This document shows positions 20,577 through 55,113 of a DNA stretch of 64,000 nt, in pieces (positions within the stretch are counted from its first letter, which is position 1; each line of letters starts with the position of its first letter). Source of the DNA: Octopus sinensis (lineage: Eukaryota); contig NC_042998.1 in the NCBI RefSeq assembly GCF_006345805.1, positions 15,872,001 to 15,936,000 of the forward strand, written 5' to 3'. The notes beneath the pieces are model-generated. The model made no database searches and was not told where the DNA came from. It worked only from the letters and a program-made list of their open reading frames with translations. Position numbers and translations under genes: made by a program.

Positions 20577-21431
20577 TTCAGTAGCTTTATTTTTATAGCG
20601 TGCTTTCACTTCACTACCGAGCGCAGCTCTGTGTGCCTTGGGTATGTGTTGTGATTTGTTGTGATGCTCTGGTGGTTATTGTATGGAAAGTGTTCTGCGT
20701 AGGATGTGTGCAGTGCCTAGTAGTGCAATTTTCTGTATGTTATATGTGTTTGTAAGTCCTGGTGTTTTTGTTATGTATGTGTCTGAATATTTTTTTATCA
20801 TGCCTAATGCACCTACTATGATAGGAATTGTTTCTGTTTTCAGATTCCACATTCTGGTTACCTCTATTTCTAGGTCTTTGTATTTTGAGAGTTTCTCCAT
20901 TTCTTTTAGAGACACGTTGTCATCTGCCGGTATTGATACATCAATTAGAAAGCATTTTTTTCCTTCATGAACTCTGACAACTATATCTGGTCTGTTGGCC
21001 TTAATTTCTCTATCTGTGTCTATCGGCATATCCCAGAGTATGGTTGCTTTCTCGTTTTCTGTGACCTTTTCTGGTGTGTGCCTATACCATCTTTTTTCTG
21101 TTGTTATTCCATAATGTTGGCATAGCTTCCAATGTATGTAGGTTCCAACTCTGTCATGTCTGTGAATATATTCCTTCTTAGCCAGGACTGGGCAGCTAGA
21201 GATAATATGATTTATTGTTCCTTGTCCATCTCTACATATTCTGCAGTTACTTGTTATATTTCTTTTCATTACATGTTTTTGGTAATTTCTGGTGGGGAGG
21301 CTTTGGTCTTGTGCTGCAATTAAAAATCCCTCTGTTTCTGCTTTGAGTCCTGAGCTTCTCAACCATTGCTGGGATTTTTCTTTGTCTATTTCTTTTGCGT
21401 TTAGTTTAGTCCAGTATTTACCATGAAGGGG
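20577..21431 (-). mobile_element. 5'-truncated R4/Dong-type non-LTR retrotransposon subfamily A (CCHC knuckle plus restriction-like endonuclease; ORF ends 20676)
   Basis: ORF has CRIC..HIISSC (CCHC), RPDIVV..IDVSIP and EKLSKY (PD-(D/E)xK REL domain) and an open frame of over 228 aa; embedded between TAA-type tracts, the known target of Dong elements. Confidence 0.9.
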
Positions 21432-21435
21432 CTTT

Positions 21436-21531
<96 letters not shown>

Positions 21532-33529: not shown

Positions 33530-33687
33530 TATATTTATATATATATACATGTATGTATGTATGTATGTATGTATGTATGTATGTATGTATGTATGTATGT
33601 ATGTATGCATATATATATATACATATATACACACATTTATATATATATTTATATGAAAAAACTCGTGGTTCCTTTTCATCCTTATAC

Positions 33688-33995: not shown

Positions 33996-34025
<30 letters not shown>

Positions 34026-34284
34026 AGTTTAACAATTAAGGATAATCTCTTAATAAGGGATCTTAACAAGAAATTATCGGGTAGCTAGCGTGAAAACCTC
34101 ATAAAAGAAAAGAATTCGAAAATAATTTTTTTCTTTTGAACAAATTAATTATATCTATATTGTATAGAGGGCATTATTACACATAAATGCCTCACACTAG
34201 GAGGGACAAAGTCATTACTACAAAATTATACTAATCATACCCAATTGCAGTTTTTCAAAGCAAGACATTTAAAAAAATGAATTT

Positions 34285-34342
34285 AGTTCTGTATCACCGT
34301 GATTTCACATTCAACTTACGTCTAATGATCGTCAGCAGAACT
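34285..34342 (-). ncRNA. Type I hammerhead ribozyme, left-arm copies (also 34766-34823, 35247-35304)
   Basis: Reverse complement of the motif at 35924-35981. Confidence 0.75.
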
Positions 34343-35923
34343 GATTCTGAACATATCATAAATAAACTACCAACCTTACGTAGCGAAGACGAACAGACAA
34401 CTGCTCCCTCCGGCCAAGCACATGGAATGTTTATAAATCATATATCCGGTAAATGGCGGGCTTTTTATGAACTGCATGTCGGGTAATGAAAAGTATTTCG
34501 GAATAAGTTTAACAATTAAGGATAATCTCTTAATAAGGGATCTTAACAAGAAATTATCGGGTAGCTAGCGTAAAAACCTCATAAAAGAAAAGAATTCGAA
34601 AATAATTTTTTTCTTTTGAACAAATTAATTATATCTATATTGTATAGAGGGCATTATTACACATAAATGCCTCACACTAGGAGGGACAAAGTCATTACTA
34701 CCAAAATTATACTAATCATACCCAATTGCAGTTTTTCAAAGCAAGACATTTAAAAAAATGAATTTAGTTCTGTATCACCGTGATTTCACATTCAACTTAC
34801 GTCTAATGATCGTCAGCAGAACTGATTCTGAACATATCATAAATAAACTACCAACCTTACGTAGCGAAGACGAACAGACAACTGCTCCCTCCGGCCAAGC
34901 ACATGGAATGTTTATAAATCATATATCCGGTAAATGGCGGGCTTTTTATGAACTGCATGTCGGGTAATGAAAAGTATTTCGGAACAAGTTTAACAATTAA
35001 GGATAATCTCTTAATAACGGATCTTAACAAGAAATTATCGGGTAGCTAGCGTGAAAACCTCATAAAAGAAAAGAATTCGAAAATAATTTTTTTCTTTTGA
35101 ACAAATTAATTATATCTATATTGTATAGAGGGCATTATTACACATAAATGCCTCACACTAGGAGGGACAAAGTCATTACTACCAAAATTATACTAATCAT
35201 ACCCAATTGCAGTTTTTCAAAGCAAGACATTTAAAAAAATGAATTTAGTTCTGTATCACCGTGATTTCACATTCAACTTACGTCTAATGATCGTCAGCAG
35301 AACTGATTCTGAACATATCATAAATAAACTACCAACCTTACGTAGCGAAGACGAACAGACAACTGCTCTCTCCGCCAAGCACATGGAATTTTTATAAATC
35401 ATATATCCGGTAAATGGCGGGCTTTTTATGAACTGCATGTCGGGTAATGAAAAGTATTTCGGAATAAGTTTAACAATTAAGGATAATCTCTTAATAAGGG
35501 ATCTTAACAAGAAATTATCGGGTAGCTAGCGTGAAAACCTCATAAAAGAAAAGAATTCGAAAATAATTTTTTTGTTTTGAACAAATTAATTATAGGCATT
35601 TATGTGTAATAATGCCCTCTATACAATATAGATATAATTAATTTGTTCAAAAGAAACAAATTATTTTCGCATTCTTTTCTTTTATGAGGTTTTCACGCTA
35701 GCTACCCGATAATTTCTTGTTAAGATCCCTTATTAAGAGATTATCCTTAATTGTTAAACTTATTCCGAAATACTTTTCATTACCCGACATGCAGTTCATA
35801 AAAAGCCCGCCATTTACCGGATATATGATTTATAAACATTCCATGTGCTTGGCCGGAGGGAGCAGTTGTCTGTTCGTCTTCGCTACGTAAGGTTGGTAGT
35901 TTATTTATGATATGTTCAGAATC

Positions 35924-35981
35924 AGTTCTGCTGACGATCATTAGACGTAAGTTGAATGTGAAATCACGGTGATACAGAACT
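35924..35981 (+). ncRNA. Type I hammerhead ribozyme, right-arm copies (also 36402, 36882, 37363, 37844)
   Basis: Helix I AGUUCUG/CAGAACU (7 bp); CUGACGA; helix II UCAUUAGAC-GUAA-GUUGAAUGU (GNRA loop, U.U at its base); GAAA; near-palindromic helix III AUCAC-G-GUGAU; AUA triplet with predicted cleavage at 35974/35975. Confidence 0.75.
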
Positions 35982-38031
35982 AAATTCATTTTTTTAAATG
36001 TCTTGCTTTGAAAAACTGCAATTGGGTATGATTAGTATACTTTTGGTAGTAATGACTTTGTCCCTCCTAGTGTGAGGCATTTATGTGTAATAATGCCCTC
36101 TATACATATAGATATAATTATTTGTTCAAAAGAAACAAATTATTTTCGCATTCTTTTCTTTTATGAGGTTTTCACGCTAGCTACCCGATAATTTCTTGTT
36201 AAGATCCCTTATTAAGAGATTATCCTAATTGTTAAACTTATTCCGAAATACTTTTCATTACCCGACATGCAGTTCATAAAAAGCCCGCCATTTACCGGAT
36301 ATATGATTTATAAACATTCCATGTGCTTGGCCGGAGGGAGCAGTTGTCTGTTCGTCTTCGCTACGTAAGGTTGGTAGTTTATTTATGATATGTTCAGAAT
36401 CAGTTCTGCTGACGATCATTAGACGTAAGTTGAATGTGAAATCACGGTGATACAGAACTAAATTCATTTTTTTAAATGTCTTGCTTTGAAAAACTGCAAT
36501 TGGGTATGATTAGTATACTTTTGGTAGTAATGACTTTGTCCCTCCTAGTGTGAGGCATTTATGTGTAATAATGCCCTCTATACAATATAGATATAATTAT
36601 TTGTTCAAAAGAAAAAAATTATTTTCGAATTCTTTTCTTTTATGAGGTTTTCACGCTAGCTACCCGATAATTTCTTGTTAAGATCCCTTATTAAGAGATT
36701 ATCCTTAATTGTTAAACTTATTCCGAAATACTTTTCATTACCCGACATGCAGTTCATAAAAAGCCCGCCATTTACCGGATATATGATTTATAAACATTCC
36801 ATGTGCTTGGCCGGAGAGAGCAGTTGTCTGTTCGTCTTCGCTACGTAAGGTTGGTAGTTTATTTATGATATGTTCAGAATCAGTTCTGCTGACGATCATT
36901 AGACGTAAGTTGAATGTGAAATCACGGTGATACAGAACTAAATTCATTTTTTTAAATGTCTTGCTTTGAAAAACTGCAATTGGGTATGATTAGTATAATT
37001 TTGGTAGTAATGACTTTGTCCCTCCTAGTGTGAGGCATTTATGTGTAATAATGCCCTCTATACAATATAGATATAATTAATTTGTTCAAAAGAAAAAAAT
37101 TATTTTCGAATTCTTTTCTTTTATGAGGTTTTCACGCTAGCTACCCGATAATTTCTTGTTAAGATCCCTTATTAAGAGATTATCCTTAATTGTTAAACTT
37201 ATTCCGAAATACTTTTCATTACCCGACATGCAGTTCATAAAAAGCCCGCCATTTACCGGATATATGATTTATAAACATTCCATGTGCTTGGCCGGAGGGA
37301 GCAGTTGTCTGTTCGTCTTCGCTACGTAAGGTTGGTAGTTTATTTATGATATGTTCAGAATCAGTTCTGCTGACGATCATTAGACGTAAGTTGAATGTGA
37401 AATCACGGTGATACAGAACTAAATTCATTTTTTTAAATGTCTTGCTTTGAAAAACTGCAATTGGGTATGATTAGTATACTTTTGGTAGTAATGACTTTGT
37501 CCCTCCTAGTGTGAGGCATTTATGTGTAATAATGCCCTCTATACAATATAGATATAATTAATTTGTTCAAAAGAAAAAAATTATTTTCGAATTCTTTTCT
37601 TTTATGAGGTTTTCACGCTAGCTACCCGATAATTTCTTGTTAAGATCCCTTATTAAGAGATTATCCTTAATTGTTAAACTTATTCCGAAATACTTTTCAT
37701 TACCCGACATGCAGTTCATAAAAAGCCCGCCATTTACCGGATATATGATTTATAAACATTCCATGTGCTTGGCCGGAGGGAGCAGTTGTCTGTTCGTCTT
37801 CGCTACGTAAGGTTGGTAGTTTATTTATGATATGTTCAGAATCAGTTCTGCTGACGATCATTAGACGTAAGTTGAATGTGAAATCACGGTGATACAGAAC
37901 TAAATTCATTTTTTTAAATGTCTTGCTTTGAAAAACTGCAATTGGTATGATTAGTATAATTTTGGTAGTAATGACTTTGTCCCTCCTAGTGTGAGGCATT
38001 TATGTGTAATAATGCCCTCTATACAATATAT

Positions 38032-38084
<53 letters not shown>

Positions 38085-38100
38085 TATATATTACATATAT

Positions 38101-38262
38101 ACGACAGGCTTCTTTCAGTTTCCGTCTACCAAATCCACTCACAGGCATTGGTCGGCCTGGGACTATAGCAAAAGATACTTGCCCAAGATGCCACGCAGTG
38201 GGACTGAACCCGGAACCATGTGGCTGGTTAGCAAGCTACTTACAACACAGCCACTCCTGCCC
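38101..38262 (-). mobile_element. SINE family B, 5' half only
   Basis: Reverse complement GGGCAGGAGTGGCTGTGTTGTAAG..GGTTCAGTCCC..GAAACTGAAAGAAGCCTGTCGT, ending where intact copies enter their internal (TA)n. Confidence 0.9.
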
Positions 38263-38329
38263 CTGTATATATATATATATGTTTGTGCGTATGTAAGAAT
38301 ATTTGCGCGAGTACACAAATATTCTTTGT

Positions 38330-39016
38330 ACCGGCATTTGTACCGAAAGCTCCAATACGAACACTTCAGCGAGTTTCGTTGTCAATCTGAAGACAATGTA
38401 ATCGGAGAACATGTATGGAGGATACTAAAAGTGAAATATTCAGTCAATATCATAGTGTTTGGAGTGATCACTAGTGATGACGACGTTATGCCAATAGTCA
38501 TCTTCCCACATGGCCTCACTCACACTCAACATGGAAGCCTACATCGAGTACCTGGAGGAGCTAGTGCAGCCCTGGGTCAAGATCGTGGATGCTGGAAGAC
38601 CCTGTATCTAGCAATAGGACTGTGCACCATGCAACATATGGTGAAGAACCTAGTCGTAGATATCAGACAAATTTTGCGGCCATATAACATTTAACAACTG
38701 GCCACCTAACTCCCCCCCACTGAAACCGTGTTAATTACTTTCTGTGGGTCGCAGTTGAGCGAGAGACCAACAAGCCTTGTAACACCAAAAATGAACTGAA
38801 GGCAAGAATTATGGCAGCATTCACCAACTTATACAAAGCGACAAGTCGTCTGGAGGCCGTGGTTGAAGCGAATGGCGATTTTATTGAAAAAATTTACCCT
38901 TTAGGATTTCAGGATATTTCCCTATAATTTTGGTAAATATATCTGTTAAAATGAGATGTCAGTGTTATTTTTAATTTTGCGTAATTTATGCGACAGTTTA
39001 CTCACCGCACCCTGTA
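38330..39016 (+). mobile_element. Tc1/mariner superfamily (DD37D/maT-like) transposon, 3' part
   Basis: IIVFGVITSDDDVMPIVIFPHG, Q.DCAPC, NWPPNSP..N..NYFLW and RLEAVVEANGDFIEK; ends ACCGCACCCTG-TA (TIR CAGGGTG plus TA). Confidence 0.75.
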
Positions 39017-39740: not shown

Positions 39741-40801
39741 ATGATTCAGGTAACATCGAATTTATAAAAGATATTGAGTGATGAAATCGTGAATACCTGA
39801 AAATTCTCTAATAAATCTTTTAGTTATACCACCTCGTTTCATCATGTTTCATAGAATTTTAAGCGGATTAAACATTGATTACTTTCTATCACTTATCTTT
39901 CGTCACCTTAGTATTTCTTCTGCAAACGTGCTATATTATAGGCTACATGGCATGCAACTATCAGCGTAAGCATCGTTGTTACTTGAAAGTGATATCCGTT
40001 TGTATATCTTACACATTATTAGCTATTGATGAGTCACAAAGTGCAATGGAAACGTCCGCATGCGTGCATAATTACAGAAGCATAATTACTCACATTCAAT
40101 GTTATATAATCTACATTTATCATTTCTAAACTAACTTATAAATTCGCACGTATCAAACACCCCCACATATATGCACGTGCACGCACGCACGCACGCACAC
40201 ATACACGGGGACATATATATTCAAATTTACATTGAAACTTACTCCAAATATATAGACATCTGATTTTATCTTGATGCCTACTTGTACCAACACATACATA
40301 CACACACAAACACACACATTCACACATGAATTAAAGTCATATTAAATCTTATACGTATATACTTGATCATAAATAGCAACACATATATATATATTGGATA
40401 TGGACGCGTTCAGTATGAGAGATAAGGTTAACAACCCGGTGCAAATATAATAAAGAATAACCTTGAATGTTTAATTAAAAATATAATGTATTATAAAAAT
40501 AAATGATATAAAAGACTGAAGGATATAAAAATGAAAATTATAATTAAGAAAGAAGCATTTTTTTCTCCATCTATTATACAAAATTGCTTGAATGATAAAT
40601 TGAATTTTAAAAGAAGGAATATTGGGATTTTGCGTGTTGACGGTGACAGGTTATGAATAAACAAGAACAGACAATGGGATTGTTATTTCAATAATAAATA
40701 TTTAAAAAATCACGAATAAAAGTTTTTCTGTATATAATCGATATTTTATATACGTACGCTTGTGTGTATCTGTGTTTATATGTGTGTATGTATATATATA
40801 T

Positions 40802-40849
<48 letters not shown>

Positions 40850-43155
40850 GATAAATATCAAAGTGAGTTATATACAGTAACGGTAACACATCGTGACGTA
40901 TTTTTGCCATTTCAATATGGCTACCCCTAAGGGTGGATGCTACTGTAGTTTTTAGCCCCAGGAGGACACACTCCTCCAGCGGCCATAGACAAACTATCTG
41001 TGTCCTGTCAGTATTTTCAAAGGGAAGTCATCCTTCCCGTCTTCAACTTATGATACACACGGACTCGAGTTTCGAGGTATTGACTCTCGTCAGCGTGTGA
41101 CAATCATAGTTGTCGCCGAGAATTAGATTTCCTTCACAAATACTTATACTTTTTCCAGCGCCCACTGTCGCTGATATTGAAAAAGTGAAATCAAACAATA
41201 ATAAATATCAAAGTGAATTATATACAGTAGCGGTAAACATCGTGACGTATTTTTGCCATTTCAATATGGCTAACCCCTAAGGGTGGATGCTACTGTAGTT
41301 TTTAGCCCCAGGAGGACACACTCCTCCAGCTGGCAATAGACACACTATCTGTGTCCTGTCAGTATTTGCAAAGGAAGTCATCCTTCCCGTCTTCAACTTA
41401 TGATACACACGGACTCGTGTGTCGAGGTATTGGTATTGACCTCTCGTCAGCGTGTGACAATCATAGTTGTCGCCGAGAATTAGATTCCTTCACAAATACT
41501 TATACTTTTTCAGCGCCCACTGTCGCTGATATTGAAAAAGTGAAATCAAACAATAATAAATATCAAAGTGAATTATATACAGTAGCGGTAACACATCGTG
41601 ACGTATTTTTGCCATTTCATATGGCTAACCCCTAAGGGTGGATGCTACTGTAGTTTTTAGCCCCAGGAGGACACACTCCTCCAGCTGGCAATAGACACAC
41701 TATCTGTGTCCTGTCAGTATTTGCAAAGGGAAGTCATCCTTCCCGTCTTCAACTTATGATACACACGGACTCGTGTGTCGAGGTATTGACCTCTCGTCAG
41801 CGTGTGACAATCATAGTTGTCGCCGAGAATTAGATTTCCTTCACAAATACTTATACTTTTTCCAGCGCCCACTGTCGCTGATATTGAAAAAGTGAAATCA
41901 AACAATGATAAATATCAAAGTGAGTTATATACAGTAGCGGTAACACATCGTGGCGTATTTTTGCCATTTCAATATGGCTAACCCCTAAGGGTGGATGCTA
42001 CTGTAGTTTTTAGCCCCAGGAGGACACACTCCTCCAGCTGGCCATAGACACACTATCTGTGTCCTGTCAGTATTTGCAAAGGGAAGTCATCCTTCCCGTC
42101 TTCAACTTATGAGACACACGACTCGAGTTTCGAGGTATTGACTCTCGTCAGCGTGTGACAATCATAGTTGTCGCCGAGAATTAGATTTCCTTCACAAATA
42201 CTTATACTTTTTCCAGCGCCCACTGTCGCTGATATTGAAAAAGTGAAATCAAACAATGATAAATATCAAAGTGAGTTATATACAGTAACGGTAACACATC
42301 GTGACGTATTTTTGCCATTTCAATTGGCTAACCCTAGGGTGGATGCTACTGTAGTTTTTAGCCCCAGGAGGACACACTCCTCCAGCTGGCCATAGACACA
42401 CTATCTGTGTCCTGTCAGTATTTGCAAAGGGAAGTCATCCTTCCCGTCTTCAACTTATGATACACACGGACTCGAGTTTCGAGGTATTGACCTCTCGTCA
42501 GCGTGTGACATCATAGTTGTCGCCGAGAATTAGATTTCCTTCACAAATACTTATACTTTTTCCAGCGCCCACTGTCGCTGATATTGAAAAAGTGAAATCA
42601 AAGAATGATAAATATCAAAGTGAGTTATATACAGTAGCGGTAACACATCGTGACGTATTTTTGCCATTTCAATATGGCTAACCCCTAAGGGTGGATGCTA
42701 CTGTAGTTTTTAGCCCCAGGAGGACACACTCCTCCAGCTGGCCATAGACACACTATCTGTGTCCTGTCAGTATTTGCAAAGGGAAGTCATCCTTCCCGTC
42801 TTCAACTTATGGTACACACGGACTCGAGTTTCGAGGTATTGACCTCTCGTCAGCGTGTGACAATCATAGTTGTCGCCGAGAATTAGATTTCCTTCACAAA
42901 TACTTATACTTTTTCCAGCGCCCACTGTCGCTGATATTGAAAAAGTGAAATCAAACAATGATAAATATCAAAGTGAGTTATATACAGTAGCGGTAACACA
43001 TCGTGACGTATTTTTGCCATTTCAATATGGCTAACCCCTAAGGGTGGATGCTACTGTAGTTTTTAGCCCCAGGAGTACACACTCCTCCAGCTGGCCATAG
43101 ACACACTATCTGTGTCCTGTCAGTATTTGCAAAGGGAAGTCATCCTTCCCGTCTT

Positions 43156-43225
43156 CAACTTATGATACACACGGACTCGAGTTTCGAGGTATTGACCTCT
43201 CGTCAGCGTGTGACAATCATAGTTG
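43156..43225 (-). ncRNA. Type I hammerhead ribozyme, left-arm copy (others at 41044, 41394, 41750, 42103, 42451, 42803, some mutated)
   Basis: Reverse complement of 43411-43480. Confidence 0.88.
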
Positions 43226-43410
43226 TCGCCGAGAATTAGATTTCCTTCACAAATACTTCACGATGGCAAAAATACGTCACGATGTGTTACCGCTACTGTA
43301 TATAACTCACTTTGATATTTATCATTGTTTGATTTCACTTTTTCAATATCAGCGACAGTGGGCGCTGGAAAAAGTATAAGTATTTGTGAAGGAAATCTAA
43401 TTCTCGGCGA

Positions 43411-43480
43411 CAACTATGATTGTCACACGCTGACGAGAGGTCAATACCTCGAAACTCGAGTCCGTGTGTATCATAAGTTG
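43411..43480 (+). ncRNA. Type I hammerhead ribozyme with palindromic helix III
   Basis: Helix I CACACG/CGUGUG, extended past a UGU/U internal loop by UAUGAU/AUCAUA and CAAC/GUUG; CUGACGA; helix II GAGGU-CAAU-ACCUC; GAAA; ACUCGAGU palindrome; GUC triplet with predicted cleavage at 43462/43463. Confidence 0.9.
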
Positions 43481-43678
43481 AAGACAGGAAGGATGACTTC
43501 CCTTTGCAAATACTGACAGGACACAGATAGTGTGTCTATGGCCAGCTGGAGGAGTGTGTCCTCCTGGGGCTAAAAACTACAGTAGCATCCACCTTAGGGG
43601 TTAGCCATATTGAAATGGCAAAAATACGTCACTATATATATATATATATACGTATATCTATTCTATATACACACACAA

Positions 43679-43765
<87 letters not shown>

Positions 43766-44376
43766 ATACATACTCACAGATTTATTTATATTACTACGTA
43801 CTTATCTGTCTGTCTATCACTCAGTCTGCCTATTTCTCCCTGTATAAGATGTACATAAAATCAATGGTAAAAAAGATAACACGGGATAGAAAATCTTGAC
43901 AAATATAGTATTCTCTTAGTATTTAAATGGAAAAAGGAATGAGCCTCACCGTTCAAGACGCCAGTAAGTCTGAAGAAATTAGATTGAGCCATACAGGGAT
44001 AGAGATACTGAAATTTGAGAGAAGAGAATGTGAGGCAAATAAAGCAGATATATCGTTAGATAGCAGATAGAGACTTTAATTCTAAGGGAAATTTAAGGAA
44101 AGAGAGAGAGAAAGAGGAGGTGATCTTTTATGTGTTAATATGTATCTCTGTCCGGAATCGAGCTTAAGAGAGAGTGGTGCATGGCAGATGAATGCCTGCA
44201 GGTAAAATGGGCAAATGCGGTAGTACGATGATCTAGTTTAGTAGGGGCTGTGTAGTTTGCTGAATAATTGAAATCATTAAGAACTTCATAAGAAGGTCTG
44301 CGGTTTGTGTGCGAGGATGTTAAACACGGTGCGGCAAATCAGAATGCAACCCGAATGAATGTATGGGTTGAGATAG

Positions 44377-48019: not shown

Positions 48020-48572
48020 AATAATAATTGTGTACAGTGCTCAGGTGCACTACAACTCATCTAAAGTGTATATATAAATATAATCAGGCGTAGTTCCGGC
48101 GGATTTCGGAAAGCATGAGGGCCTTAAAGGATGCAGTGTCATGGCAGTCAACAACTGACGCAGGCAGTTTTTTCCATGCTTCAGCAACTCTCAGCGTGAA
48201 AAAATGTTTCCGAAAGTCATGGGAGCTGTGTTGTTTTCTGACTTTGTAGGCATGTCCACGTCTGTTAGGCACATGGAGATCAAAAAGGTGTTCAGTGTTG
48301 TTGTTGGTGAGGTGGTTGATAACTTTGTGGGTGCTTACCAAGTCCGTCGCCAGACGCCGGAGCTTCAGTGAATCCATGCCAAGGGAAACAAGGCGCTCAG
48401 AATATGGTAGGTGTCTGATGGAGGGTATGCGTTTGGTTGCACGTCTCTGGACAGATTCCAGGAGGTCAATGTTCTGAGCAAGATAGGGGTTACAAACTGA
48501 TGATGCGAATTCCAAGTGTGGTCGAACCATAGCTGTATACAGTTTTAAATAGATGACTGGAGAGCGGCTAAT
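48020..48572 (-). mobile_element. CR1/L2-clade LINE 3' end with an (ATT)n tail
   Basis: LYTAMVRPHLEFASSVCNPY..LLESVQRRATK..YSERL..LRRLATDL..FFTLRVAEAWKKLP, then a short UTR and TTA repeats. Confidence 0.9.
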
Positions 48573-48769
48573 ATATAGATACTACGTGTGCGTACATACG
48601 TTCATAGTTACATACATACATACATAGAAATATGAATCAAATACCTGATGCACAATAATGATGGAGACGCAGGTAAAGCAGTCACATATGGCAACCGATC
48701 AGACATGGTGTTGTACCTAGGACACCCTATCCGTTGGAAGGATAAAGGAATAAGGACCCGCAATATGGT

Positions 48770-53907: not shown

Positions 53908-54662
53908 TACGAGGTGATATAAAAACCTTCCCACACTAGTCTTGTAGCTCGCCAACAGATGGCAGCACACGGTTGCGTTTGCAGTGAGAGCTAGGTGTGA
54001 CCTTCATGTGGCAGCGTGCTGAGTGATATCACTGTGTTTACCTTGGAAGCTGTGAAATTTGTCTTTCTATGATCACATGCTGTAGTCTGCGATTTTGTCA
54101 GAACAAAGAGCCAACATGAAAGTTTGCGTTAAATTTGGTAAGTCTGCTGCAGAGACATTGAACATGCTTTGGAAACTTACGGTGGTAACGCAATGGCTCG
54201 TACTCAATGATCCGAGTGACACTGGTGCTAAAGAAGCGGGAAACCGTTGGTGAAAGGAACACTTGCCACGAGCGCCACGCCCGAAAATGTGGTATTGTAT
54301 ATAGAGAATAAGTCTCCCAGGGGCAGACTGTTAATCTAGAGTTCTACAGCGATGTTTTGAAGTGGAAGTGTGGAGCCCGGTGCATTGGATTCTTCACTAA
54401 ACTTTCCTCACTCGTGAATTTCTTGCCAAAATCAACATTGTATGTCTTCTGCACCCGCCCTATTCACCAGATTTAGACCCTGTGGACGTCTATATCTTCC
54501 CCATGATGCAAATGTAACTCAAATGTCACCATTTTAACAGGGTTTTCGAGATCAACTCCCTTAGGGAAACGATTTCCAGGCCGGATTCCAAAAGCGGCAG
54601 GAATGCTGGCAGCGGTGTATTTCTGCGCAAGGTGACAATTTCGATCGAGAAGATGCTAAAGC
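53908..54662 (+). mobile_element. Deleted mariner element
   Basis: TA-CGAGGTG start; EQRANMKVCVKFGKSAAETLNML (N-terminal HTH); REFLAKINIVCLLHPPYSPDLDPVD; FQAGFQK..WQRCISAQGD. Confidence 0.85.
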
Positions 54663-54663
54663 T

Positions 54664-54836
54664 TAGGCGCAAGAGTAGCTGTGTGGTAAGTAGCTTGCTT
54701 ACCAAACACATGGTTCCGGGTTCAGTTCCACTGCGTGGAATTTTCGGCAAGTGTCTTCTGCTATAGCCTCGGGCCGACCAAAGCTTTGTGAGTAGATTTG
54801 GTAGACGGAAACTGAAAGAAGCCCGTCGTAAATACG

Positions 54837-54889
<53 letters not shown>

Positions 54890-55113
54890 CGTGTATGTTT
54901 GTGTGCCTGTGTCTGTCCCCCTAGCATTACTTGACAACCGATGCTGTGGTTTTTATGTCCCCGTTACTTAGCGGTTCGGTAAAAGAGACCGATAGAATAA
55001 GTACTGTGCTTACAACGAATAAACCCCGGGGTCGAGTTGCTCGATTAAAGGCGGTGCTCCAGCATGGCCGCAGTCAAATGACTGAAACAAGTAAAAGAGT
55101 AAAGCGTAAGAGT
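54664..55113 (+). mobile_element. tRNA-derived SINE family B
   Basis: Full two-half structure with an internal (TA)n. Confidence 0.9.

What the first reader, a model, noticed from the sequence alone, without database searches (positions are those of the whole stretch)
40847..43632. ~351-bp x8 array with a textbook extended type I hammerhead, same inverted TA-embedded architecture
Seen: a fully canonical core with G10.1-C11.1, 5-bp helix II, GUC site, palindromic ACUCGAGU helix III and a 16-bp interrupted helix I whose internal loop is placed to contact loop II. The unit is unrelated in sequence to the 480-bp family 3 kb away, yet has the same head-to-head layout with 3' ends facing (TA)n. Inference: a shared insertion mechanism rather than local amplification. 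Units differ by diagnostic variants, which argues against an assembly artefact.
Basis: partly seen in the sequence, partly recalled or inferred. Interest (0 to 1): 0.93.

Follow-up and report, generated by a model that had tools for sequence, protein, structure and literature searches.

The report
Hammerhead-ribozyme retrozyme array, Penelope-style insertion
This is one insertion of a young, genome-wide family of small non-coding mobile elements (a "retrozyme") whose 353-nt unit carries a self-cleaving hammerhead ribozyme. Its layout carries the integration signature of Penelope-like retrotransposons, so it is a clear new example of a known kind, not a new kind.

Summary
Window 40847-43632 contains 6.8 tandem units (period 353, not 351) on the minus strand, joined head-to-head to 1.05 units on the plus strand, inside a (TA)n tract. 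Each unit carries a type I hammerhead. Four of the eight copies are canonical, and the predicted cut at 43462/43463 is right.

It is not a local satellite. The exact 45-nt ribozyme occurs 587 times in the 2.72-Gb genome, at an extrapolated ~360 loci, and copies are 98-100% identical. In 24 sampled loci the arms sit in (TA)n and have variable truncated 5' ends. Their 3' ends fall at one of two fixed sites 46-49 nt apart (q171-174 or q217-220). All 16 two-armed insertions use one site on each arm.

Published work describes AT-rich targets, extension of both DNA strands and two internal reverse-transcription start sites that leave a one-sided "tail". It reports the tail as unique to Penelope-like elements. 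An older related family and the unrelated 481-bp neighbour follow the same rule. The neighbour also has a hammerhead that Rfam misses.

Verdict: a non-LTR retrozyme mobilised by Penelope-like machinery, a new member of a known kind. Ribozyme activity, circular RNA and the autonomous partner remain untested.

The parts
40787..40846 (.). (TA)n microsatellite flanking the 3' end of the minus-strand arm; the left half of the target tract
   Evidence: TRF 40787-40847, period 2; sequence. (TA)n flanks the 3' ends of nearly all arms at 24 loci.
40847..40892 (-). 46-nt 'tail' (unit positions q217 down to q172), present on this arm only
   Evidence: This arm ends at q217, while the other arm ends at q171. 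The tail corresponds to the stretch between the two reverse-transcription start sites of Penelope-like elements (PMC11167929).
40847..43258 (-). Minus-strand arm: 6.8 tandem units of 353 nt; RNA sense runs right to left; 3' end at 40847 (q217); truncated 5' end at 43258 (q269)
   Evidence: TRF; BLAST unit map; per-unit variants.
43259..43262 (.). 4-nt filler at the head-to-head junction of the two 5' ends
   Evidence: Gap between the two BLAST arms. Other loci show 0-7 nt of overlap or a 4-15 nt filler at this junction.
43263..43632 (+). Plus-strand arm: 1.05 units (q154-353, then q1-171); 3' end ...AAAUACGUCAC|(TA)n with no tail
43633..43772 (.). (TA)n/(CA)n tract flanking the 3' end of the plus-strand arm; the right half of the target tract
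   Evidence: TRF 43633-43772; sequence.
43424..43468 (+). Canonical type I hammerhead; predicted cleavage between 43462 and 43463
   Evidence: RF00163, 32.2 bits, full-length alignment; descriptor scan.
43168..43212 (-). Canonical hammerhead; cleavage 43174|43173
42815..42859 (-). Canonical hammerhead core, with U>C in the middle segment of helix I just outside the 45-mer; cleavage 42821|42820
42463..42507 (-). Canonical hammerhead core, with a 1-nt deletion in the helix I internal loop; cleavage 42469|42468
42114..42156 (-). Defective hammerhead copy: helix II GG>G, C1.1 deleted, and a helix I substitution
   Evidence: RF00163, 22.4 bits; sequence.
41762..41806 (-). Defective copy: GAAAC>GACAC plus U>A in helix III, so the conserved GAAA box is destroyed (approximate coordinates)
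   Evidence: 344A>C, 347T>A; no Rfam hit.
41406..41457 (-). Defective copy: the same GACAC change plus a 7-nt duplication in loop II (approximate coordinates)
   Evidence: no Rfam hit.
41056..41099 (-). Hammerhead copy with a 1-nt deletion in helix II (GAGGUC>GAGUC)
   Evidence: RF00163, 29.1 bits.
43482..43632 (+). Unit positions q20-171, between the cleavage site and the first 3'-end site. This is the part best conserved in the older related family. Inferred reverse-transcriptase-binding region; the 3' end lies in the loop of a predicted hairpin.
   Evidence: 75% identity to the old family over about q2-276, strongest over q44-150; hairpin from the circular fold; analogy with the protein-binding region of the anole element (PMC11167929). 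The function is inferred.

Best explanation
The array is one insertion of a young, non-coding, non-autonomous retrotransposon of the non-LTR retrozyme class.

Proposed cycle. Arrays are transcribed. The type I hammerhead in each 353-nt unit cuts the transcript into monomers. A host RNA ligase closes the monomers into highly base-paired circles.

A Penelope-like element's protein (reverse transcriptase plus GIY-YIG endonuclease) then breaks a (TA)n tract. It uses both exposed 3'-OH ends as primers. Copying starts at two fixed internal sites of the RNA: q171-174, in the loop of an AC-containing hairpin, and q217-220. It runs round a circular template, or along a multimeric one, for 0.2 to 7 units.

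The two antisense cDNAs are joined at their random 5' ends, with 0-7 nt of microhomology or a short filler. The result is the head-to-head pair with 3' ends facing (TA)n and a 46-49-nt tail on one arm only.

Shown here: the anatomy, the genome-wide dispersal, the fixed 3' ends and variable 5' ends, the one-of-each rule, the (TA)n targets, and the conservation of the ribozyme in a related family.

Inferred: self-cleavage, circular RNA, the Penelope-like enzyme as the mobiliser, and rolling-circle copying.
For: (1) Ribozyme. The Rfam alignment to Hammerhead_1 is full-length. All conserved core nucleotides and the three helices can be read directly. The descriptor scan finds 5 + 8 hits in the window and none in 30 shuffles.

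(2) Mobile family. The exact 45-mer occurs 289 times forward and 298 times reverse; the reversed control gives 0. Units on many chromosomes are 98-100% identical. About 70% of 85 sampled ribozyme copies are identical to the consensus.

(3) Integration signature at 24 loci. The 3' flanks are (TA)n. The 3' ends fall at q171-174 or q217-220. The 5' ends are scattered and not enriched at the cleavage site. Arms span 0.2-6.8 units. All 16 of 16 two-armed insertions have one end of each kind; by chance this is about 2^-16.

(4) Single event. Substitutions private to a locus occur in every unit and in both arms: L040 264A>T in 3/3, L034 237A>G, L035 307A>G in 5/5, L031 72G>T in 4/4.

(5) Generality. 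The older related family has ends at q314-320 and q362-372, one of each in 6/6 loci. The unrelated 481-bp family has ends at p137-143 and p269, one of each in at least 7 loci.

(6) Published match. Penelope-like insertions are 5'-truncated and tandem or inverted. They carry a tail at one end only, and the Naiad and Neptune clades favour (TA)n (PMC8557442). A purified Penelope-like protein cleaves and extends both strands at AT-rich DNA. It starts reverse transcription at two internal sites in an AC-rich stem-loop downstream of the hammerhead. The tail is the stretch between those sites, a signature reported as unique to these elements (PMC11167929).

(7) Availability of the enzyme. The genome holds thousands of GIY-YIG matches, with open frames up to 781-883 aa. 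One Penelope-like fragment with a CX5CxxC linker ends directly in (TA)n (L031:3-1260).

(8) RNA fold. The monomer folds at -122 kcal/mol, z = -6.8, with 63% of bases paired as a circle. Retrozyme circles are described as highly self-paired (PMC7229834).

(9) Conservation. The ribozyme core is kept in a family that is about 25% diverged. Compensatory changes occur at 1.1-2.1, 10.2-11.2, the third pair of helix III and two pairs of the middle segment of helix I.
Against: No expression, cleavage or circular-RNA data could be obtained.

The Rfam score (32.2 bits) is below the curated threshold of 34.

The autonomous partner was not identified. The two Penelope-like fragments lying near sampled insertions share no sequence with the unit. 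Further genomic sequence could not be fetched.

Half of the ribozyme copies in this particular array are defective.

The old family's consensus has a C.A mismatch at 10.1-11.1. The covariation rests on a single split between two families, and 24 of 500 shuffles reach the observed covariation score.

Arrays that are homogeneous for private variants are also what local amplification or a homogeneous source array would give.

In vitro, the anole enzyme showed no difference in start sites between the two strands (PMC11167929). The strict one-of-each rule is therefore not yet explained.
Confidence: 0.8

Rival explanations
1. The arrays are truncated or solo terminal repeats (pLTRs) of an autonomous Penelope-like element, not a dedicated non-coding retrozyme family.
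For: Penelope-like elements carry hammerheads in their pLTRs and insert as 5'-truncated partial tandems (PMC8557442). Vertebrate retrozymes are closest to pLTRs (10.64898/2026.07.22.740005). The genome is rich in such elements.
Against: In 24 loci, arms of up to 6.8 units simply repeat the 353-nt unit and never run into coding sequence. The longest stop-to-stop frame in a tandem of the consensus unit is 66 aa. The hammerhead is an extended canonical type I, not the minimal variant reported for Penelope-like elements (PMC7229834).
Confidence: 0.1
2. The element is a SINE-like passenger of a LINE, and the inverted arms arise by twin priming.
For: Fixed 3' ends, 5' truncation and inversions also occur with LINE target-primed reverse transcription. 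LINE reverse-transcriptase fragments are common in the window and the sampled loci.
Against: (TA)n lies on both sides, even at single-arm insertions. About two thirds of insertions are two-armed. The second primer uses a second fixed site rather than random internal positions. The one-sided tail is reported as unique to Penelope-like elements (PMC11167929).
Confidence: 0.05
3. It is an ordinary satellite amplified locally, with a relic or chance hammerhead-like motif.
For: The array is tandem. Half of the motifs in this array are mutated. Adjacent units share variants, as unequal crossing-over would give.
Against: The 45-mer has 587 exact copies at hundreds of dispersed loci, each a short array with defined ends. 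The motif is conserved, with compensatory changes, in a diverged relative. Shuffles give no chance motifs.
Confidence: 0.03
4. It is a DNA-level element that targets AT/TA (for example Helitron-like), or an inverted duplication created by long-read assembly.
For: Helitrons insert between A and T and can form tandem arrays. Long-read assemblies can create false palindromes.
Against: There is no fixed 5' end and no CTRR 3' end; the ends are ...GUCAC and ...UCAUU. The two arms differ in length, in 5' break point and in 3' end, and unique sequence flanks both sides at many loci.
Confidence: 0.02

Closest known systems
Non-LTR retrozymes of metazoans (Cervera and de la Pena 2020, PMC7229834), including the newt/axolotl 330-350-bp 'satellite 2' and the coral and mussel families
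   Same: A type I hammerhead in every unit. Unit size falls within 150-450 bp. GC is low (43%). There are no LTR/PBS/PPT features and no coding capacity. Arrays range from dimers to multimers and are dispersed. The monomer RNA is highly self-paired. Helix III is 2 bp plus a tetraloop, as described for invertebrate ribozymes.
   Different: The host appears to be a cephalopod, a group not mentioned in that work. Here the insertion anatomy can be read cleanly ((TA)n target, twin inverted arms, two fixed 3' ends), which the retrozyme papers I read do not describe. Expression as circular RNA was not tested here.
Penelope-like elements and their integration signature (Craig et al. 2021, PMC8557442; Frangieh et al. 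2024, PMC11167929)
   Same: AT-rich or (TA)n targets, 5' truncation, tandem and inverted copies, both DNA strands used as primers, two internal start sites a few tens of nucleotides apart downstream of a hammerhead, and a tail on one end only.
   Different: There is no reverse-transcriptase/endonuclease frame. The tail is 46-49 nt here and about 126-132 nt in the 481-bp family, against 30-40 nt reported. The hammerhead is extended and canonical rather than minimal. No sequence similarity to a particular Penelope-like element was shown.
Plant LTR retrozymes (PMC4918200)
   Same: Non-autonomous, hammerhead-processed, with circular RNA intermediates proposed as templates for a borrowed reverse transcriptase.
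   Different: The plant elements have type III hammerheads inside LTRs, PBS/PPT features, 4-bp target duplications, Gypsy-type mobilisation, a size of 600-1000 nt and high GC.
L1 twin priming
   Same: Two target 3'-OH ends prime on the RNA and produce inverted segments joined by microhomology.
   Different: In L1 the second primer anneals at random internal positions and only in a minority of insertions. Here it uses a second fixed site, and most insertions are two-armed.

Membership tests
Hammerhead ribozyme, type I (Rfam RF00163) | Conserved core CUGANGA ... GAAA ... UH, with G10.1-C11.1 at the base of helix II | tested here: met
   CUGACGA / GAAA / GUC with G10.1-C11.1 in 4 of the 8 copies in the window and 587 exact copies in the genome.
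Hammerhead ribozyme, type I (Rfam RF00163) | Three helices with helix I open (5' and 3' ends in helix I) | tested here: met
   Helix I totals 16 bp and is interrupted. Helix II is 5 bp with a CAAU loop. Helix III is 2 bp with a UCGA loop.
Hammerhead ribozyme, type I (Rfam RF00163) | Score at or above Rfam's curated gathering threshold (34 bits) | tested here: inconclusive
   The score is 32.2 bits with a full-length 1-45 alignment, E = 7e-5 over 11 kb and 8.5e-7 locally. It falls below the cut-off by 1.8 bits. The threshold is a curation setting, not a structural feature.
Hammerhead ribozyme, type I (Rfam RF00163) | Mg2+-dependent self-cleavage 3' of H17 | not testable with these tools
   The predicted site is 43462|43463. 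This needs a transcription and cleavage assay.
Hammerhead ribozyme, type I (Rfam RF00163) | Helices supported by covariation among relatives | tested here: inconclusive
   83.7% of cells are paired, against 13-51% when the partners are slid. Three pairs change on both sides. By eye, two more compensatory pairs lie in the middle segment of helix I. There is only one family split, and 24/500 shuffles reach the covariation score.
Non-LTR retrozyme (PMC7229834) | Short tandem repeats of 150-450 bp, each with a type I hammerhead, and low GC | tested here: met
   The unit is 353 bp with 43% GC, and every unit has a hammerhead.
Non-LTR retrozyme (PMC7229834) | Non-coding, with no LTR/PBS/PPT features | tested here: met
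   The longest frame in a tandem consensus is 66 aa, with no database relatives. The arms have no terminal repeats other than the unit itself.
Non-LTR retrozyme (PMC7229834) | Dispersed, multi-locus mobile family | tested here: met
   There are 587 exact ribozyme copies. On contig 1 alone, 52 copies fall at 32 places. Identity between chromosomes is 98-100%.
Non-LTR retrozyme (PMC7229834) | Expressed as linear and circular monomer RNA | not testable with these tools
   Only the predicted fold is available: -122 kcal/mol, z = -6.8, 63% paired as a circle.
Element mobilised by Penelope-like machinery (PMC8557442; PMC11167929) | Two fixed internal 3'-end sites, giving a tail on one end only | tested here: met
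   The ends are q171-174 and q217-220, with one of each in 16/16 twin insertions. The same holds in the old family (6/6) and the 481-bp family (at least 7).
Element mobilised by Penelope-like machinery (PMC8557442; PMC11167929) | 5' truncation with tandem and inverted copies (both strands primed) | tested here: met
   The 5' ends are variable, and 16 evaluable twin-arm insertions with 0-7 nt of microhomology or a filler at the junction are found among the 24 loci.
Element mobilised by Penelope-like machinery (PMC8557442; PMC11167929) | AT-rich or (TA)n target | tested here: met
   The TA fraction of the 24 nt next to the 3' end is at least 0.7 for nearly all arms.
Element mobilised by Penelope-like machinery (PMC8557442; PMC11167929) | Sequence shared with an autonomous partner at the pLTR/ORF junction or 3' region | tested here: inconclusive
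   The two Penelope-like fragments held (L031, L039) show no similarity. Candidate intact copies were located but could not be fetched.
Classical satellite DNA | Long homogeneous arrays at a few loci, growing by unequal exchange | tested here: not met
   Arms are at most 6.8 units long, lie at hundreds of dispersed loci and have defined ends.
Helitron-like element | Fixed 5' TC and 3' CTRR ends with a subterminal hairpin, and insertion between A and T | tested here: not met
   The 5' ends are variable, and the 3' ends are ...GUCAC and ...UCAUU.

The most novel reading that the evidence does not exclude
The strict one-of-each rule, together with private variants shared by both arms, would mean that each array is born in a single event. 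In this reading a dimeric Penelope-like ribonucleoprotein holds one (probably circular) retrozyme RNA. It primes from both ends of the (TA)n break, with each protomer committed to a different one of the two start sites. Retrozyme insertions would then be natural read-outs of the still unresolved second half of Penelope-like integration, and would be evidence that arrays are not grown locally.
Probability: 0.35. Interest if true: 0.6.

Novelty: new member of a known kind. Interest (0 to 1): 0.4.

Why it matters
Animal retrozymes are known. How they are mobilised rests on co-occurrence with Penelope-like elements and, in frogs, on similarity to their terminal repeats.

This family is young enough for the insertion anatomy to be read base by base. 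It shows all the hallmarks of Penelope-like integration in a non-coding hammerhead element, and so do an older relative and an unrelated neighbour. That is direct structural support for the proposed partnership. It also argues that the arrays arise at insertion rather than by later local growth, which a 2026 preprint proposes.

The family extends retrozymes to what appears to be a cephalopod genome. It also offers 587 identical ribozyme copies as a ready substrate for cleavage, circular-RNA and reconstituted-integration experiments.

Tried and rejected
- **Rfam at gathering thresholds** found nothing in the window. The hammerheads appeared only in E-value mode.
- **Rfam on 11 loci of the older family** gave only microsatellite-driven miRNA false positives. 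Its ribozyme had to be found with a sequence anchor.
- **Search for the partner element.** No listed GIY-YIG place lies within 5 kb of a listed unit copy (both lists are partial). The Penelope-like fragments that happened to lie in sampled loci share nothing with the unit and have no Rfam hammerhead. Pfam barely recognises them.
- **Cross-species or transcript evidence.** I searched for proteins mis-called from the repeat, and no candidate was found.
- **Snap-back (self-primed) origin of the inverted arm.** Rejected, because the arms differ in length, in 5' break point and in 3' end.
- **Linear ribozyme-cleaved monomers as the template.** Rejected, because 5' ends are not enriched at q1 and every multi-unit arm reads through the cleavage site.
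- **Per-position conservation within the young family.** Uninformative, because copies are 98-100% identical.
- **One fetched region (L032)** was a typing error and was not used.
Full report
**What is there.** Tandem Repeats Finder reports a 353-bp period, 6.9 copies and 97% matches at 40847-43258, bracketed by (TA)n at 40787-40847 and 43633-43772. The repeat finder shows that 43263-43635 is an inverted copy of the array unit, 95-99% complementary.

I numbered the unit from the predicted ribozyme cleavage site (q1-q353) and mapped it back with BLAST. This gives:
- a minus-strand arm of 6.8 units, with its 3' end at 40847 (q217) and its 5' end at 43258 (q269);
- a 4-nt filler;
- a plus-strand arm of 1.05 units (q154-353, then q1-171), ending at 43632.

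The two RNA-sense strands therefore diverge from a head-to-head junction, and both 3' ends face (TA)n. The period is 353, not 351.

**The ribozyme.** No Rfam family reaches its gathering score in the window. In E-value mode, Hammerhead_1 (RF00163) matches over its full length at four places with 32.2 bits (threshold 34) and at two more places with lower scores. The alignment covers all 45 model positions.

Read directly, the motif is CACACG-CUGACGA-GAGGU-CAAU-ACCUC-GAAA-CUCGAG-UC^CGUGUG:
- G10.1-C11.1 is present, helix II has 5 bp, and the cleavage site is GUC.
- As a monomer, helix III is 2 bp plus a UCGA tetraloop. This is the invertebrate form described in PMC7229834.
- Helix I is 6 bp, an internal loop (UGU/U), 6 bp, a bulged A, then 4 bp.
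- The cut in the plus-strand copy falls at 43462|43463, as predicted.

Only four of the eight copies are canonical. Two have lost a G in helix II. Two adjacent ones have GAAA changed to GACA, and one of these also carries a 7-nt duplication.

A descriptor scan I wrote finds hammerheads in the window only in this family and in the 481-bp family. It finds none in 30 shuffles.

The monomer folds at -122 kcal/mol (z = -6.8), and as a circle 63% of its bases are paired.

**It is a dispersed, young family.** The window comes from a 2.72-Gb eukaryotic assembly. The unit matches many chromosomes at 98-100% identity, often as adjacent minus/plus pairs.

The exact 45-nt ribozyme occurs 289 times forward and 298 times reverse. 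The reversed control gives 0. On contig 1, the 52 copies fall at 32 places, which extrapolates to roughly 360 loci.

In sampled loci, about 70% of 85 ribozyme copies are identical to the consensus. That identification is tentative and rests on size alone.

**Anatomy of 24 insertions.**
- Nearly every arm has (TA)n next to its 3' end. Most single-arm insertions have TA-rich sequence on both sides.
- The 3' ends fall at only two places: q171-174 (...AAAUACGUCAC|) and q217-220 (...UAUCAUU|).
- The 5' ends are scattered over the unit and are not enriched at q1.
- Arms are 0.2-6.8 units long.
- Junctions show 0-7 nt of overlap or a 4-15 nt filler.
- In all 16 evaluable two-armed insertions, one arm ends at each site. 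One arm therefore carries a 46-49-nt tail and the other does not.
- Substitutions private to a locus are present in every unit, and in both arms where the locus has two: L040 264A>T, L034 237A>G, L035 307A>G, L031 72G>T. The two arms therefore come from one event and one template population.
- A snap-back origin is excluded, because the arms differ in length, in break point and in 3' end.

**Relatives.** One locus contained a fragment 75% identical to the unit. Using it as a query revealed an older family whose copies are 80-85% identical to one another.

This older family is also head-to-head, with ends at q314-320 (...UUUUACGAU|) or q362-372. One of each is found in 6 of 6 pairs.

Its consensus ribozyme is CACACA-CUGAUGA-CGGGU-UACU-ACCCA-GAAA-CCCGGG-UC^UGUGUG. 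Compared with the young family:
- the core boxes are kept;
- changes are compensatory at 1.1-2.1 (G-C to A-U), at 10.2-11.2 (A-U to G-C), at the third pair of the helix III palindrome (U-A to C-G) and at two pairs of the middle segment of helix I;
- 10.1-11.1 is a C.A mismatch.

The pair count gives 83.7% of cells paired, against 13-51% when partners are slid. The evidence is one family split, so it is moderate only.

The unrelated 481-bp family 3 kb upstream (no similarity) also has a type I hammerhead. Rfam misses it because helix II is long and has a U.U mismatch at its base. Genome-wide, its arms end at p137-143 or p269, again one of each per pair in at least seven loci.

**Comparison with what is known.**
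- Tandem 150-450-bp repeats with type I hammerheads, low GC and no coding capacity, expressed as self-paired circular RNAs, are the non-LTR retrozymes (PMC7229834). That paper proposes Penelope-like elements as the mobilisers.
- A 2026 preprint finds frog retrozymes closest to the terminal repeats of Penelope-like elements, and suggests that arrays grow locally (10.64898/2026.07.22.740005).
- Penelope-like insertions are described as 5'-truncated, tandem and inverted, with a 30-40-bp tail at one end only. The Naiad and Neptune clades favour (TA)n (PMC8557442).
- A purified Penelope-like protein cleaves and extends both strands at AT-rich DNA. It starts reverse transcription at two internal sites in an AC-rich stem-loop downstream of the hammerhead. 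The tail is the stretch between the two sites, a signature called unique to these elements (PMC11167929).

Every one of these features is met here. The first 3' end even lies in the loop of a predicted hairpin, AUACGUC-ACGA-.... The stretch between the ribozyme and the start sites is the part best conserved between families, and this is where the anole protein-binding region lies.

The genome has thousands of GIY-YIG matches, with frames up to 781-883 aa. One Penelope-like fragment with a CX5CxxC linker ends directly in (TA)n.

**What remains open.**
- I could not fetch intact Penelope-like copies. The fragments at hand do not match the unit, so the partner is unidentified.
- Self-cleavage, circular RNA and transcription are untested.
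- Homogeneity of arrays does not by itself separate rolling-circle copying from a homogeneous multimeric template or from later homogenisation.
- Many single-base differences between units are homopolymer indels that may be assembly errors.
- In vitro the two start sites were used equally on both strands (PMC11167929), so the strict one-of-each rule seen here lacks a demonstrated cause.

**Verdict.** The object belongs to a known class, the non-LTR retrozyme with a type I hammerhead, and carries the known integration signature of Penelope-like elements. It is a clean, young, apparently cephalopod example with some mechanistic value, but it is not a new kind of system.

Noticed in passing
window 34023-38030 (arms 34023-35594 minus, 35594-38030 plus); ribozymes at 35931-35974, 36409-36452, 36889-36932, 37370-37413 and 37851-37894 (+), and 35297-35254, 34816-34773 and 34335-34292 (-): The 481-bp head-to-head family also carries a type I hammerhead in all 8 units: CAGUUCUG-CUGACGA-U-CAUU..GUAA..AAUG-U-GAAA-UCACGGUGA-UA^CAGAACU. 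Rfam misses it because helix II is long and has a U.U mismatch at 10.1-11.1. Genome-wide its arms end at p137-143 or p269, one of each per pair, so its tail is about 126-132 nt.
   Followed up: partly
L041-L052, e.g. L042:1489-2111: An older family about 75% identical to the unit, with copies 80-85% identical to one another. It is also head-to-head with a one-sided ~45-50-nt tail. Its hammerhead shows compensatory changes relative to the young family and a C.A mismatch at 10.1-11.1.
   Followed up: partly
L031:2085-2490: A third, more diverged relative of the same superfamily. It is head-to-head, flanked by (CA)n/(TA)n, and truncated before the ribozyme.
   Followed up: no
L031:3-1260 and L039:6027-6611: Fragments of Penelope-like elements lie within 1-2.2 kb of retrozyme insertions. 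One has the end of the reverse transcriptase, a CX5CxxC linker and a GIY-YIG domain with one in-frame stop, and its 3' untranslated end abuts (TA)n. The other has reverse-transcriptase motifs. Neither resembles the unit, and neither has an Rfam hammerhead.
   Followed up: partly
G000 places listed, e.g. C6:12733272, C6:12759897, C3:65736423, C1:207477583, C19:35627265: Many GIY-YIG matches have identical scores and 781-aa open frames, which suggests a very young and possibly active Penelope-like family. These are candidate partners but could not be fetched.
   Followed up: no
G000 C13:29988995 (L053:296-340), C5:60037714, C16:25146363 and 25146794: Other hammerhead families score above the Rfam threshold (best 48.2 bits). 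They include a pair 431 bp apart, which may be a further retrozyme family. The best hit is a solitary motif unrelated to the unit.
   Followed up: partly
L038:2851-5320 and L034:3269-5177: Two complete head-to-head insertions sit side by side in one (TA)n tract. In L038 their break points differ, so they are independent insertions. In L034 they are identical, so the second copy is a later duplication or an assembly duplication.
   Followed up: no
window 38100-38400 and 54526-54927; also L023, L030, L033, L045, L046: A short interspersed repeat lies next to (TA)n/(CA)n tracts in many loci. Its spurious translation reads ...LPKMPRSGTEPGTMWLVSKLLTTQP.... It is probably an abundant SINE.
   Followed up: no
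window 20676-21497 (-) and 48084-48578 (-): These are LINE-type reverse-transcriptase remnants. The first has a weak zf-RVT match in Pfam, and the second has no Pfam match.
   Followed up: partly
window 33569-33647, 43637-43779, and many loci: (TA)n/(TG)n microsatellites give spurious sub-threshold Rfam matches to mir-297, mir-466 and similar families.
   Followed up: yes
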